This document shows, one piece after another, positions 38,495 to 60,868 of a DNA stretch of 64,000 nt. The position numbers and the translations under genes are program-made. Position 1 is the first letter of the stretch. The number at the start of each line of letters is the position of its first letter. The notes beneath the pieces are model-generated. The model made no database searches and was not told the DNA's origin. It worked only from the letters and a program-made list of their open reading frames with translations. This stretch comes from Octopus sinensis (taxonomy: Eukaryota), in the NCBI RefSeq assembly GCF_006345805.1, contig NC_043006.1, positions 48,670,001 to 48,734,000 of the forward strand, in the 5' to 3' direction.

Positions 38495-38779
38495 GTAAGT
38501 ATTCTGTGAAAGGTTAACACTTCTGACAACTTTTAGACTAATTCTTTAAATCTCTTTCAGCTTCATATCTGGTTCTGATTCATCACATGTGGAGTTCTTC
38601 ATTGAATAATAGGGAATAATTAGAATGTCTGCGATTGTGTGTATCAGAATATATGCATAGGTCAATGTGTGTGTGTGTGTGTGGTGTATGCATGTGTGTG
38701 TGTGTGTGGATAAGAGGTTTGTCTCTATTTATGTAAGCAAGCAGTTGAGGGGATGATGATAGTTTGGAGGTATTTATTA

Positions 38780-39105
38780 TTAGTTTCGTGGCACCTTGGG
38801 CAAGTGTCTTCTACTACAGCTTCAGGCCAACCAAAGCCTTGTAAGTGGATTTGGTAGAGGGAAACTGAAAGAAGCCTGTCGTATATATGCATATGTATAT
38901 ATATGTGTATATGTTAGTGTGTCTGTGTTTGTCCCCCCAACATCGCTTGACAACCAATGCTGGTGTGTTTACATCCCCGTAACTTAGTGGTTCGGCAAAA
39001 GGGACCAATAGAATAAGTCCTGGGGTCGATTTGCTCAACTAAGGGCGGTGGTCCAGCATGGCCACAGTCAAATGACTGAAACAAGTAAAGAGTAAAGAGT
39101 AAGAG
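38780..39105 (+). mobile_element. SINE family A, 5'-truncated
   Basis: Starts at gtggcaccttgggcaagt and runs to the aaagagt tail. Confidence 0.8.
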
Positions 39106-40422
39106 TACACGCACTTGACACCTAAGCTTGTTTTGCGTGATTTTTTTTTTTTCTTTAAATGATCCTTAGGACACATAAGGCTAGTAAACTCTGTTTCAAT
39201 GGCATATAAGTAACAGAGATCACAATACTGCCCCTGAACGGGCCACTATTCCATTGCAAATTTAACTTCCCAGATATTACGAGGACTCATTAACAGCTGA
39301 GCAGAGTGGAACAACTTGAAAGCAAGTGTCTTCTATCTTAGTCTCAGGCCAACCAATGCCTCATGAGTGAATTTGGTTGACGGAAACTGTGTTGAAGCCC
39401 AACATTATATATATATATATACACACACATATATATATATATACACATATATATATAGATATATGGGAATGTTTGTGTTTTTCTGTCTCTCGCAGCCCCC
39501 CCCCCATCCCCACCCCAACTGCTTGCTGATCAGTGTTGGTTGTTGGTTTGTTTATATCCCTGCAGCTTAGCAGTTTAGTAGTTCGGCAAAACAAACTGGT
39601 AGAATAAGTACCAGAAGCTAAATTCTTCTAGGTGGTGCTCTAGCATGGCCACATCCAATAACTGTAATAAAAAGCAAAACATGTACACACACACACACAC
39701 ACACACACACATGCACACACATACAGAGGTGACTTACTGACATTAAAAGAGAAGTCTAATATAGCAAGACGTTCATGCATTTCATTTATTTCTCTGCGAG
39801 ATTACCATAGATCTTAGGACCCTCATCCCACGCTATCATCTTGATAACTCAGTTTCCCCAACTTTTACTCTAATCACCTTGTAATCCCTGAATTTCACCA
39901 TCAAAGAAGGGCTCTGCATTGAAATATAGAGCCCTTCTTTGATGAAATTCTTTTCTCGTGGCAATCTACATTATCCTATCATATTAATTTTACGTTCAAC
40001 CTTCAATAATCTGAAAGCAGGTATCTCTCCACACACACACACACACTCATACAAACATCCATCTCTGTCCCCTCCCCTTATTAATTTATTTACCTTTTGA
40101 TGTTTTTATCAGTGAAGATACTTCGCCATCATTCACACCTTGAATTTGCTAAGATTAAGACTTCATTTCATAGAGAATTTACAACAATCACAGAATTTTT
40201 CTATCTATAGGAAAGCCCAGGAAGAAAGATCTGAGGAATTCCGACTGCATGAACGAAGAAAAGAGGTGAAAGAGAGAGAGAGGGGGGAGCAGTATATATG
40301 TGTGTGTGTGTGTGTACGTGTGTTTATCTGTATGTATTTGTTTATACATGTATGTGTGAGTAAATGACAAAGAAACTGCAGAAATCATTTCTGAAGTTTG
40401 ATTTTATTTTTTCCATTTGCAG

Positions 40423-40425
40423 GAG
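40423..40425 (+). other. Candidate 3-nt microexon (GAG)
   Basis: tttgattttattttttccatttgcAG|GAG|GTaaac: long U-rich tract, TGCAG acceptor, immediate GT donor; frame-neutral. Confidence 0.35.
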
Positions 40426-40493
40426 GTAAACCTTTCTCTGCTTTAAACAAGCGTTTATACTTTGCAATCACACGCATACACAAGCACACACGT

Positions 40494-40527
<34 letters not shown>

Positions 40528-40714
40528 CTGTACACACAAATTTGTTTCTTTTTTTCGCCCTTTATCTGGATAATTCTTTGTCTCAACCTGAAATTTCAAC
40601 GGCAATTGATGTCTTTTCTGTCTAGTCATCATTCTTTTCCATATTTTCTTTTCTTTAACATAACATTTCCCCCCTTTTAATATGTCTAGCTTCTTCATGT
40701 TTATATCTGCATCT

Positions 40715-57049: not shown

Positions 57050-57098
<49 letters not shown>

Positions 57099-60000
57099 AT
57101 GTGGATATATGTGTGTATATATGTATATATATATAGATATATGTGTGTATGTATGTATATACGTATGTATATGTATGTATGTATACGTATGTATTTATAT
57201 GTACGTTTCTATATATATATATATGTGTGTATGAAGATATGTATATATATACATTTTTTATGAGCTATTGATGGTTTCATGCAATGGAAACATCATAGAT
57301 ATTAAAAAAATGCTGTTTGTTTTCATCTTTCCCTGATCTTACCCTCATGGGTATATATATATATTATATATATATATATATATATCGCTGAGCTAACTTG
57401 GGATTCCTTAATGGCAATATAGCCTTCATATAATTAAGATATCCTCGACCTCATGTGTAGGTGACTGAATATCCCTCGTTGAGTAATTATTACATCAGAG
57501 GATCTGCTAGCCAGGAAACATAAGTAGCCTGAACTTAACCTGCTTTTCTCCCTCAGTTTGGATATATATATATATACACATATATAAAAGGAGGAATCAT
57601 TGGACTACATAGTCTCAGATACATTCTTTGACTGAAAAAAAGCAAATCCTACTGGAATGCTTTGATCATGTATTCATCTGCTTAATCACGGCTGACTTAC
57701 CTGGGACAAAGCAACAACACCAACACTATACATAGATGCACATACACATAAATGCCAAGTCCTTGCTGCCAAAGATTCAATAGAAGAGAGTTGTATATAT
57801 TTGTTTGTGATGGATAGGGCAGAAAATTCGGGATACATTGTAGCATCTTTGACAACAGCTCTCACTGGCTATACAGGCATGCTGCATGGATTTACAGATG
57901 CTTTCCGTTGGAGATAGTTTGCACTCTTTCTTTGAATATGTGCAATAACGGAGGTTATTCAGTAGCAACGTGCATTTTTTTTTGTTTGATTTTCTTTCGT
58001 TTTTTTTTTTTAATTTTCATTTATCCCCATTGCTATTTATATTTGCAGTCTTATTAGTATTAGCATTATTAGTAGTATTATCAATGCTATTATTGTTTAT
58101 CTTTACTATAGAAATTCTTATTGTTAAAATTATCAATGTTATCTGTTATTTATATTGATTTATTGAATTTTTTTTTTATTCTTCAGTTGAAGCCTTAAAT
58201 TATTTTTTTTTTTTTTTGTTATTGTTAATGCTATGCATTCTTCCTAAAGATTTTCTTTCTATAAAATTATTCTCATTGATAAAGACTGCTTCCTTTCGTT
58301 TTCACTTTTATGGCATTACGAAATTTTGGGGTTTTTTTTTTTTAGTTTTTTAGTTTTTCCTTTCTAAATACTATTTAAAGCTTCCAGTCCCCACATAAAA
58401 AAACATTAATAATAATAACAATGATGATTCTTGCAACAAATTGGTTGCACTACATATCTAAAAAATTTATATATATACATACATACATACATACATACAC
58501 ACACATACACATAGTATTCTTAGGCAAATGATATATTTATTCCAAACAACACATCTAGATTATTGGAAAATATGGAGAAACAAACAAACAAGTAAAAAAA
58601 TATCAGTCAAAATTCATAAAATAGCTGATCGCGAAAAATTGTTTTAAAACAATCATGGCGGCCATTGTGAAATTTGTTTGGAGACAAGAGGGTTAGTTAG
58701 ATTAAGCAGACTAAACTAAAATTTTTCTTTATTTTTTTTTAATGATATATAAGGAAATCTCGTAAAAGAAAAGAAGTTTTCCTCTTGTGGAATTGTTATT
58801 TCTTAAATACTGACTTTTTATTGGCTTTCAGGTACTTAATGTACCTTTTGTTTTATGGGTTGTTTTTTTTTTAAATTCCTGTTTCTCTGTGGTTAAATAC
58901 TCCTTCTCCATATAAGACTTAATCAATTGCCTGATTTCACCTTATTCATGGAAAAATAATGCAAAGAATTCATTGAGATACATATATTCTAAATATTTAG
59001 CATAGATAGTTGACATGGCACAAAAGTAAGCACTCAGTTTTGGCACTTAGTTGATGTTTTATTCATCTTTGTGGTTTACATAATAGCATCAATTAATTGT
59101 CTAACTACTTAGAATTAATTTTTCATCTTAATCCAGTGGATGGCCGAAAATTCCCTATAAGGTTCATCTGAGATTGGCAGATTGATGCCATTATATTTAC
59201 AGCTAAAACCCTAAAATACTTAATGCTCAATACCTGAGACCACTGAGATACGACTCTAGATTGATGTGTTGCTTTCTAAATCCCCTTCTTATGAGGGGAA
59301 ACTTACTCACAAATGACCCATTGCAAGTATTTGTTGTTGGTTTTGGGGTTTTTTGTTTGTTTTTGTTTTTTTTTCTCACTGGAGAAATTGAACTTAGCAT
59401 TCACATTCTGACACATCAGTCTTCAGCTGTAACAAGAAGAGCTCAGCCATTGAGAGTTGTGATAGGTTTGAAGTACACAGTCTGAGGATCTTTTCAACAG
59501 CTTTTACTCTGAGCAGCAGGACTATTTTCCACACCATTTTTAAGTTACTTAGGAACTAGGATTCTTTTACGGACCAAAGGATGTTTTGGTCATCGCTAAG
59601 ATAAAGTGTCTTCTGCCATGTTATGTAAGATATTAGTCTTTTCAACCACTTTGAAATCTTCATTACCATCAGCATCGCACTCATTATCATCATCATTATT
59701 ATAATCATCAAACCTCATCATCATCACCATTATCATCATCATCATCATCAGAATGGCAATCATTATAATCATAACCAATAACAATTACAAAAATAAATGG
59801 ACTAGGAAGAGAGTGAGGAAATAGATTTTGGAGACTTCTGGAAAATACTAGCAGCAACTTCCAAATCTTTGCTTGGTAGTTTAGTCATGTTCAGTTTGAA
59901 GTCCTGAGAACCAATGTCCACCATAGATAGTCTTAAACTGCAAACTTAGCCACATTCTTCATTTTTTCCTTTTTCTTTTTTGTTTGTTCTTGTGGTTGTG

Positions 60001-60214
60001 ATTTTGGTATAATTCTTGGTATTGTTGCAGCTAAATGCTCTCCCAACCATTGCCATTCCCCTTAATCCTGCTCATTTGCATATAACCAATAAATGTAATC
60101 CAGGAATCGTGTAAATCCAGTTAACTCTCACATCACAAAGAAGATATGGATTTAAAGAAGTAAAAACAAAAATGAACTATAAATTGCCAACTATAACATA
60201 TATATACATATATT

Positions 60215-60250
<36 letters not shown>

Positions 60251-60639
60251 TATATTATATATATATATAAATATATACTATTTGTAAACTAATCATTGTT
60301 TTATTTTGAAATAATGTCCAATAATCCATATTTTTGTCTTTTTTATATTTTGCTCATTACTAGTGTTTGTTTTAATGTTTGTGTGTTGATGTTGTTGTCA
60401 TTATTGTTTTCTTATTGCAATAACCCCCAGAAGCTTGGTAGTTGTTTTTTTTTTCTTTTTTATGTGGTATGATATATTCACCTCGTCCGAGTTGTTTTTT
60501 TTTTTAATGTGTCTTTTGTTTTTTGGGTTTTTGTTTTTTGTCTGTTTCTATGTTTGCCTGTTTATTGCATGATATAGGTGATACATCCATTAATACGTGT
60601 TCCTTCTTCACAAGTGTATGTTTTCCTTCCGTGACCCAG

Positions 60640-60868
60640 CAGACGATTCCCATCCCTTGACCCCAACACTGACCCACTCACCAACCATCCCTCTAGGCCT
60701 GCAGAACCTGAACTCCGATAGCTTGCCGTCAGAGCCAGTCGACCTACACGAAGTGATCCGAGCCCCAAGCTTTGTCACGCTGTCATGGAAACCACCCACC
60801 CACACTGGACCGAAGGATACCAAAATCATCAGCTACTCTGTCTTCTGGAAAGAGAAAGAACGTGAAAG
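60640..60868 (+). CDS. DCC: DCC/neogenin exon: Pro/Thr/Ser linker plus N-terminal part of FN3-1 (DDSHPLTPTLTHSPTIPLGLQNLNSDSLPSEPVDLHEVIRAPSFVTLSWKPPTHTGPKDTKIISYSVFWKEKERER)
   Basis: Tandem CAGCAG acceptor (exon start 60640 or 60643, both phase 1); donor AAG|GTTTGT (phase 2); FN3 motifs LSW.PP and Y.V.W. Confidence 0.9.

What the first reader, a model, noticed from the sequence alone, without database searches (positions are those of the whole stretch)
38495..60696. The 22-kb Ig4-FN1 intron looks like an isoform switchboard for the netrin receptor
Several independent signals in this one intron are all compatible with its phase 1: a microexon, internal first exon(s), a stop-containing or recursive site, and three in-frame acceptors. 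Together they predict full-length, linker-variant, Ig-less membrane and possibly Ig-only secreted products from one gene. The Ig4-FN1 junction is a known alternative-splicing hotspot (an insert of about 20 aa in mouse neogenin; a much longer insert in Drosophila frazzled), but I know of no description of this combination.
Basis: inference. Interest (0 to 1): 0.72.

Follow-up and report, generated by a model that had tools for sequence, protein, structure and literature searches.

The report
Octopus neogenin linker splice choice
The 22-kb intron between the Ig4 and FN1 exons of the octopus neogenin gene is mostly repeats; the only isoform switch supported here is a conserved, already annotated cluster of three acceptor sites at its 3' end that adds or removes a ~19-20-residue linker.

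Summary
The window is Octopus sinensis chromosome DNA carrying the 5' half of the neogenin/DCC-family gene (+ strand). The intron is real: the Ig4 exon ends at 38494 in phase 1, and FN1 starts at 60640, 60643 or 60697.

All three in-frame acceptors are used in public gene models. Of 26 octopod isoforms, 15 use 60640, 7 use 60643 and 4 use 60697. The O. vulgaris set was built with Iso-Seq. Ten squid/cuttlefish transcripts use only the distal site. The NAGNAG and the distal acceptor are almost base-for-base conserved in the cuttlefish genome. A homologous ~20-aa 'DVPLPTT…' linker is present or absent in isoforms of bivalves, chelicerates, shark and teleost. The linker variant is therefore real, old and already annotated.

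Nothing supports the rest of the 'switchboard'. No isoform contains sequence from inside the intron. No intron sequence is conserved with about 10 kb from each end of the decapod intron. There is no YAG|GTRAGT recursive site. Phase-1-compatible microexons, ATG-to-donor frames and AATAAA are as frequent on the antisense strand and in neighbouring introns. Many 'sites' lie in SINEs or microsatellites.

Verdict: partly supported, ordinary, low novelty.

The parts
38219..38494 (+). Ig4 exon (whole I-set domain), phase 1 at both ends; donor ATA|gtaagt
   Evidence: 100% identical to XP_036362516 residues 338-429; Pfam I-set E=7e-20
38495..60639 (+). Ig4-FN1 intron, 22,145 nt, 33% G+C. At least 28% interspersed repeats plus long microsatellite tracts. 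No Rfam, tRNA or Pfam signal.
60620..60642 (+). Polypyrimidine tract plus tandem NAGNAG acceptor (ttttccttccgtgacCCAG|CAG|). Exon starts at 60640 (…RPH-T-DDSHP) or 60643 (…RPH-N-DSHP).
   Evidence: Both junctions appear in annotated isoforms. 18 of the last 20 intron nt are identical in Sepia pharaonis.
60640..60696 (+). Alternative 57-nt (or 54-nt) exon extension encoding the Pro/Thr/Ser-rich linker (T)DDSHPLTPTLTHSPTIPLG
   Evidence: Present or absent in isoforms. 75% nt identity to Sepia, against 65% for the constitutive part. Homologous alternative segment in other phyla.
60677..60696 (+). Distal acceptor (ctcaccaaccatccctctAG|G). Its use gives the short form …RPH-S-LQNLNS. The ctcac may be its branch point (inference).
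   Evidence: Used in 4 O. vulgaris isoforms and in all 10 decapod transcripts. The block CTCACCAACCAT.CCTCTAGGCCT is conserved in Sepia.
60697..60868 (+). Constitutive part of the FN1a exon; donor AAG|gtttgt, phase 2
52359..52756 (.). ~390-bp high-copy young repeat. At least 40 scored copies at 98-99% identity out of 18,916 first-look candidates for the whole 7-kb query. Contains exon-like AG…GT frames and one RS-like site.
53717..55877 (.). Block of SINE-like copies and trinucleotide arrays. Carries five of the strongest acceptor-like sites (53881, 54201, 54727, 55186, 55351), four of them with stops within five to six codons.
40423..40491 (+). Best-scoring phase-1-open cassette candidate (acceptor score 13.4; 3-nt or 69-nt versions) in single-copy sequence. 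No transcript or conservation support.
52883..52936 (+). Strongest acceptor-like site in the intron (score 15.1, itself a CAGCAG), in single-copy sequence. The phase-1 frame stops after 17 codons. This is the only plausible 'stop-containing' site. Unsupported.

Best explanation
The region is an ordinary long, repeat-filled phase-1 intron of the Octopus sinensis neogenin (DCC/Frazzled-family) gene. Its only isoform-generating device is a cluster of three alternative 3' splice sites at the start of the FN1 exon.

Splicing from the Ig4 donor (38494) to the proximal tandem CAG|CAG (60640 or 60643) keeps a 20- or 19-residue Pro/Thr/Ser-rich linker between the Ig1-4 head and the FN3 stalk. Splicing to the distal AG (exon start 60697) removes it.

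The acceptor cluster is conserved between octopus and cuttlefish. The optional linker is homologous to the optional ~20-residue Ig4-FN1 segment of neogenin in other bilaterians.

Inferred, not shown: the linker changes the spacing or flexibility, and perhaps the O-glycosylation, between the Ig horseshoe and the FN stalk. Tissue-specific splicing factors probably choose between the pyrimidine-rich proximal site and the weaker C-rich distal site.
For: Gene identity: 4 I-set + 6 fn3 + Neogenin_C. The window exons are 100% identical to O. sinensis XP_036362516.

Junction use in 26 octopod models: 60640 x15, 60643 x7, 60697 x4.

The O. vulgaris isoforms come from an annotation that used PacBio Iso-Seq and RNA-seq through PASA (PMC10700109).

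Ten decapod Logan transcripts all use the distal site, while the Sepia genome keeps the proximal CAGCAG and the linker frame.

Identity to Sepia: last 20 intron nt 90%, alternative segment 75%, constitutive exon 65%, further upstream 43%.

Long/short isoform pairs with a D-V-P-L-P-T-T-like segment occur at the same place in Mytilus, Centruroides, Limulus, Tachypleus, Argiope, Pristiophorus and Astyanax.

Literature: Neo1 splice sites SS1-SS5 (PMC9171784); Fra and TcFra inserts between Ig4 and Fn1 (PMC11702761).
Against: I had no reads for O. sinensis itself. The eight O. sinensis RefSeq models I could see all use 60640, so use of 60643 and 60697 in this species is inferred from its sister species and from sequence identity.

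Only 15 of the 45 members of the main isoform cluster could be listed, so unseen isoforms exist.

Homology of the linker across phyla rests on position, length and a short motif, not on a statistical test.

The functional effect of the linker is pure inference.
Confidence: 0.8

Rival explanations
1. One reading: the intron contains real octopus-specific exons (a microexon, one or more internal first exons, a terminal or poison exon). Besides linker variants, these would yield Ig-less membrane and Ig-only secreted neogenin.
For: Two strong acceptor-like sites lie in single-copy sequence: 40423 (score 13.4, with donors 3 and 69 nt downstream, frame open) and 52883 (score 15.1, stop after 17 codons). 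An in-frame ATG sits at 60618, 22 nt before the proximal acceptor. Sepia pharaonis has gene models (P0139, P0140) that start 0.9 kb upstream of FN1. Acceptor-like sites are enriched over dinucleotide shuffles, 35 against 21.5±4.6.
Against: None of 26 octopod isoform models and none of 10 decapod transcripts contains intron-derived sequence at this junction. That includes the longest model, O. bimaculoides X1 at 1578 aa.

No cephalopod protein of 278-884 aa (Ig-only size) appears as a cluster representative.

Candidate counts equal those on the antisense strand and in other introns of the window.

The excess of acceptor-like sites over shuffles is explained by pyrimidine microsatellites and SINE copies.

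Nothing in the intron matches the first 10 kb (L002) or the last 10.9 kb (L001) of the decapod intron.

The ATG at 60618 is not conserved in Sepia, and the product would lack a signal peptide.

The Sepia models translate the polypyrimidine tract and look like a split gene call.

Read-through of the Ig4 donor stops after 7 codons, and the nearest AATAAA is 1.1 kb away.
Confidence: 0.07
2. The long intron is removed stepwise by recursive splicing at an internal ratchet point.
For: The intron is long (22 kb). Five relaxed AG|GT sites have acceptor score >=6 and donor score >=5: 52397, 52817, 54727, 57461, 58832.
Against: There is no YAG|GTRAGT or YAGGTAAG on the sense strand. Relaxed sites number 5, against 6 on the antisense strand and 2.1±1.5 in shuffles. 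Three of the five lie in repeats.
Confidence: 0.04
3. The distal (60697) junction is annotation noise, and only the NAGNAG wobble is real.
For: Only O. vulgaris models show it among the octopods. Its acceptor score is the lowest of the three: 7.6 against 9.5 and 8.8.
Against: It is the only junction seen in 10 independent decapod transcript assemblies. The site is perfectly conserved in Sepia. Short forms at the same position exist in many phyla.
Confidence: 0.05

Closest known systems
Vertebrate neogenin (Neo1) alternative splicing (four variants in Keeling et al. 1997; splice sites SS1-SS5 in PMC9171784)
   Same: Same gene family. Database isoforms show an optional segment of about 20 residues between Ig4 and FN1, with a shared D-V-x-L-P-T start in shark and teleost isoforms. 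Isoform diversity is combinatorial with other sites.
   Different: I could not check whether the vertebrate segment is a cassette exon or an acceptor choice, nor where the papers place each SS site. In coleoids it is an exon extension chosen among three acceptors, one pair being a NAGNAG.
Drosophila Frazzled long isoform (+151 aa) and Tribolium TcFraL (+98 aa) between Ig4 and Fn1 (PMC11702761; Kolodziej et al. 1996)
   Same: Alternative splicing at the same domain boundary of the orthologous receptor. Its function is unknown there too.
   Different: The insect inserts are much longer and unrelated in sequence. I found no open, splice-flanked frame of 90-1200 nt in the octopus intron outside repeats.
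NAGNAG tandem acceptors
   Same: CAG|CAG three nt apart. Both are used and change one residue (T-D to N).
   Different: Here it is coupled to a third acceptor 57 nt downstream.
DCC long/short linker isoforms regulated by NOVA (PMC4930329)
   Same: A ~20-residue linker between extracellular domains of a netrin receptor, toggled by alternative splicing.
   Different: From my own knowledge, that event lies between FN4 and FN5, not between Ig4 and FN1. Regulation in octopus is unknown.

Membership tests
DCC/neogenin/Frazzled receptor family | Four N-terminal Ig (I-set) domains, six FN3 domains and a conserved cytoplasmic tail (Neogenin_C) | tested here: met
   Pfam on P0001: I-set x4, fn3 x6, Neogenin_C E=1.7e-16. 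The window exons are 100% identical to P0001.
DCC/neogenin/Frazzled receptor family | Orthology to neogenin rather than DCC; binding of netrin/RGM | not tested
   Only the source names ('neogenin-like') and the best hits. No tree and no binding data.
Alternative 3' splice-site cluster / NAGNAG | Two or more AGs in frame, each seen joined to the same upstream donor in transcripts | tested here: met
   RPH-TDD, RPH-ND and RPH-SLQ junctions in 15, 7 and 4 octopod models. The O. vulgaris set is based on Iso-Seq and RNA-seq.
Alternative 3' splice-site cluster / NAGNAG | Conservation of the competing sites | tested here: met
   CCCAGCAGACG and CCTCTAGGCCT are identical in Sepia pharaonis.
Neogenin Ig4-FN1 optional linker | Same position, similar length, and long and short isoforms in other species | tested here: met
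   Long/short pairs in 7 or more taxa, with 11-20 residues removed and a shared DVPLPTT-like start.
Recursive splice site (ratchet point) | Strong acceptor directly followed by a reconstituted donor (YAG|GTRAGT) | tested here: not met
   0 matches on the sense strand. Relaxed sites are at background level.
Intronic cassette or microexon | Inclusion in transcripts or isoform models | tested here: not met
   0 of 26 octopod models and 0 of 10 decapod transcripts. Only 15 of the 45 cluster members were visible.
Intronic cassette or microexon | Sequence conservation across species | tested here: inconclusive
   No match to about 10 kb at each end of the decapod intron. No other octopod genome could be fetched. 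Very short exons would escape BLAST.
Alternative promoter / internal first exon in this intron | Transcripts whose 5' end lies inside the intron | not testable with these tools
   No CAGE or read data. The only annotated alternative N-terminus (O. vulgaris MLRDHNVAF…) maps to 29337-29503, upstream of Ig1b and not in this intron.
Intronic polyadenylation giving an Ig-only secreted form | 3' ends inside the intron and an annotated truncated product | tested here: inconclusive
   No cephalopod representative of 278-884 aa. Read-through stops after 7 codons, and the first AATAAA is at 39666. No 3'-end data.

The most novel reading that the evidence does not exclude
At least one octopod-specific exon exists in the single-copy parts of the intron. 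One candidate is the 40423 acceptor with its 69-nt open frame. Another is the 52883 acceptor used as a terminal exon, giving an Ig1-4-only secreted neogenin. Current annotations would have missed it because it is rare or tissue-restricted.
Probability: 0.07. Interest if true: 0.45.

Novelty: already known. Interest (0 to 1): 0.2.

Why it matters
The finding shows that the one real isoform switch at this junction is already present in RefSeq and ENA gene models. It also belongs to a known hotspot of the neogenin/Frazzled family.

The modest added value is comparative. The optional ~20-residue Ig4-FN1 linker seems to be an old bilaterian feature. Coleoid cephalopods produce it with a triple-acceptor arrangement conserved between octopus and cuttlefish.

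That makes cephalopods a usable system for asking what this linker does for netrin/RGM receptor geometry. The question is still open in flies and vertebrates.

The 'switchboard' idea itself should not be carried forward without read evidence.

Tried and rejected
(1) Searches for protein fragments spanning the junction (167-aa query) and for Ig-only products (504-aa query) found no cephalopod variants.

(2) Orthologous introns from other octopods could not be fetched. The Argonauta gene range is 244 kb, so no DNA was returned. The O. vulgaris product is not on record. Only decapod flanks were available.

(3) The whole-protein search of the own genome failed. Exons were mapped by local tblastn instead.

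Repeat coverage of 28% is therefore a lower bound.

(5) Rfam and tRNA scans of the window found nothing.

(6) Pfam on ten non-low-complexity intronic ORFs found nothing, so a nested gene is rejected.

(7) I looked for a Fra-L-like long cassette (90-1200 nt, open, phase 1). There are only 4 candidates, all inside repeats.

They were used only for relative comparisons with control sequences. The real Ig3b acceptor scores only 2.6, so weak real sites could be missed.
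Full report
**What the window is.** The window is G000 contig C10:48,670,001-48,734,000 of a 2.72-Gb, 13,516-contig assembly. Its exons are 100% identical to Octopus sinensis 'neogenin-like isoform X9', XP_036362516. That protein has four I-set Ig domains, six fn3 domains and a Neogenin_C tail, so it belongs to the DCC/neogenin/Frazzled family.

The + strand carries these exons:
- Ig1a 25669-25825
- Ig1b 29504-29649
- Ig2 31581-31865
- Ig3a 33517-33679
- Ig3b 37357-37496
- Ig4 38219-38494
- FN1a 60640/60643/60697-60868
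- a 33-nt microexon 62176-62208, which lies in the next intron

**Checking the observation.** The Ig4 exon ends CAT A|gtaagt, so the intron is phase 1. The FN1 exon opens with ...ttttccttccgtgacccag|cag|ACG. A second site...ccctctag|GCC, lies 57 nt further on. All three acceptors keep the frame. The coordinates, the phase and the three in-frame acceptors are therefore correct.

I scanned the intron for them myself.

**Isoform evidence.** I used a query padded with X to full-length size so that full-length relatives would be found. With cluster look-ups, this gave 26 octopod isoform models: 8 O. sinensis, 6 O. bimaculoides, 11 O. vulgaris and 1 Argonauta hians. At the Ig4-FN1 junction they read as follows:

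| Junction reading | Acceptor used | Models |
|---|---|---|
| RPH-TDDSHPLTPTLTHSPTIPLG-LQNL | 60640 | 15 |
| RPH-NDSHPLTPTLTHSPTIPLG-LQNL | 60643 | 7 |
| RPH-S-LQNL | 60697 | 4 |

None carries any other sequence at this junction. That includes the longest model, O. bimaculoides X1 at 1578 aa.

Ten decapod transcript assemblies from Logan all read LQK-S-LSNLNL, which is the distal acceptor.

**Conservation.** I fetched a Sepia pharaonis locus (L001) with 10.9 kb upstream of its FN1 exon. I also fetched a decapod contig (L002) with Ig2 to Ig4 plus 10 kb of the intron after Ig4. BLASTN and TBLASTX of the octopus intron against both found only the exons.

The octopus-Sepia alignment starts about 20 nt before the proximal acceptor. 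TTTTCCTTCC.TGACCCAGCAGACG and CTCACCAACCAT.CCTCTAGGCCT are nearly identical in the two species. Identity by segment:
- last 20 intron nt: 90%
- alternative 57 nt: 75%
- constitutive exon part: 65%
- further upstream in the intron: 43%

An alternative region more conserved than its constitutive neighbour is the usual mark of a regulated splice choice. Part of that constraint may be the branch point and pyrimidine tract of the distal site lying inside the coding extension. This last point is inference.

**The linker is old.** I extracted the stretch between the last Ig4 cysteine and the FN1 tryptophan from 100 family members. Long and short isoform pairs occur at the same spot in Mytilus, Centruroides, Limulus, Tachypleus, Argiope, the shark Pristiophorus and Astyanax. 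The removed pieces are 11-20 residues long and often start D-V-P-L-P-T-T. The Sepia genome encodes DVPLPTTPSQTRSPTIPLG at the homologous place.

The literature records splice sites SS1-SS5 in mouse Neo1 (PMC9171784, citing Keeling et al. 1997). It also records inserts between Ig4 and Fn1 in Drosophila (151 aa) and Tribolium (98 aa) Frazzled, whose function is unknown (PMC11702761). I found no paper on cephalopod neogenin splicing.

**Inside the intron.** TRF finds 40 tandem arrays, mostly TA/CA/TC and trinucleotide runs, dense between 40.4 and 46.3 kb. A library of only 242 kb (200 kb of random genome plus the rest of the window) marks 28% of the intron as interspersed repeat. One 390-bp element (52359-52756) has at least 40 copies at 98-99% identity. 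Rfam, tRNA and Pfam searches found nothing.

**Chance expectation.** I used a generic donor/acceptor weight matrix, calibrated on the window's real exons. Real acceptors score 7-14, with one at 2.6. Real donors score 5-9. Controls were 100 dinucleotide-preserving shuffles of the intron (200 for the RS-like row), the antisense strand of the same intron, and the upstream 25.7 kb of the window.

| Signal | Intron, sense strand | Controls |
|---|---|---|
| Acceptor-like sites, score >=7 | 35 | shuffles 21.5±4.6; antisense 24; upstream 34.5 per 22 kb |
| Donor-like sites, score >=5 | 81 | shuffles 73±8 |
| Phase-1-open cassette candidates <=300 nt | 3 | antisense 2 |
| ATG-to-phase-1-donor frames | 29 | antisense 31 |
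| AATAAA | 25 | antisense 42 |
| Microexon-like phase-1-open pairs, relaxed cut-offs | 5 | antisense 5; upstream 7-8 |
| Open cassettes of 90-1200 nt | 4, all in repeats | antisense 2; upstream 3 |
| YAG\|GTRAGT | 0 | antisense 1; upstream 1 |
| Relaxed RS-like sites | 5 | antisense 6; shuffles 2.1±1.5 |

Several of the strongest acceptor-like sites are copies of one SINE motif (ctttgcctttcatcctttcag|GNTNGATAAAATAAGTACCAG). These have stops within five to six codons.

Two strong sites lie in single-copy DNA, at 40423 and 52883. They cannot be excluded, but nothing supports them.

Read-through of the Ig4 donor gives SKYSVKG-stop, and the first AATAAA is 1.1 kb away. The in-frame ATG at 60618 is not conserved in Sepia, and its product would lack a signal peptide. 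The Sepia 'Ig-less' models translate the pyrimidine tract and look like a split gene call.

**Conclusion.** It is already in public annotation and belongs to a known, ancient hotspot. The other proposed products have no support, and the signals behind them occur at chance frequency.

I put 0.8 on the plain reading and about 0.07 on any real intronic exon. Interest is low at 0.2. The only mildly new points are the cross-phylum conservation of the optional linker and the conserved triple-acceptor arrangement in coleoids.

Noticed in passing
window 62176-62208 (+): A 33-nt microexon encodes SHKKRRRKGEI and is inserted in the first FN3 domain (acceptor score 7.2, donor 8.8). It is present in all O. 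sinensis, O. bimaculoides and Argonauta models seen. It is absent from the O. vulgaris models and the decapod transcripts seen. It is a highly basic insert, possibly a protease or heparin-binding site; this is speculation.
   Followed up: partly
window 29337-29649 (+): O. vulgaris isoforms P0007, P0008 and P0131 start with MLRDHNVAF…, which maps to intron sequence contiguous with the Ig1b exon. This is an alternative start or a retained intron. The product lacks the signal peptide and half of Ig1. It is the only annotated 'internal first exon' of the gene, and it is not in the finding's intron.
   Followed up: partly
window 52359-52756: A ~390-bp element has at least 40 scored copies at 98-99% identity across many chromosomes (18,916 first-look candidates for the whole 7-kb query). 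It looks like a very young, high-copy repeat family. It carries a chance 135-aa ORF with no Pfam match.
   Followed up: partly
window 29839-30351: A 27-nt minisatellite of 19 copies (83% matches) lies in the Ig1b-Ig2 intron. It is open in frames on both strands (…EAMTNDCLT… repeats of 9 aa).
   Followed up: no
window 42001-44000: Strong strand asymmetry (GC skew -0.48) from C/T-rich low-complexity sequence. It yields long P/S/T/L-rich pseudo-ORFs such as 42755-43306 that could be mistaken for linker-coding sequence.
   Followed up: partly
L001 10001-11160 (Sepia pharaonis CAHIKZ030000424.1): The public S. pharaonis NEO1 models (939 and 893 aa) begin 0.9 kb upstream of the FN1 exon and translate the acceptor's pyrimidine tract. 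The gene seems to have been split at this long intron during annotation.
   Followed up: partly
window 1-25668: The signal-peptide exon (residues 1-~38 of P0001) was not found in the window, so the first intron exceeds 25 kb. The Argonauta orthologue spans 244 kb.
   Followed up: no
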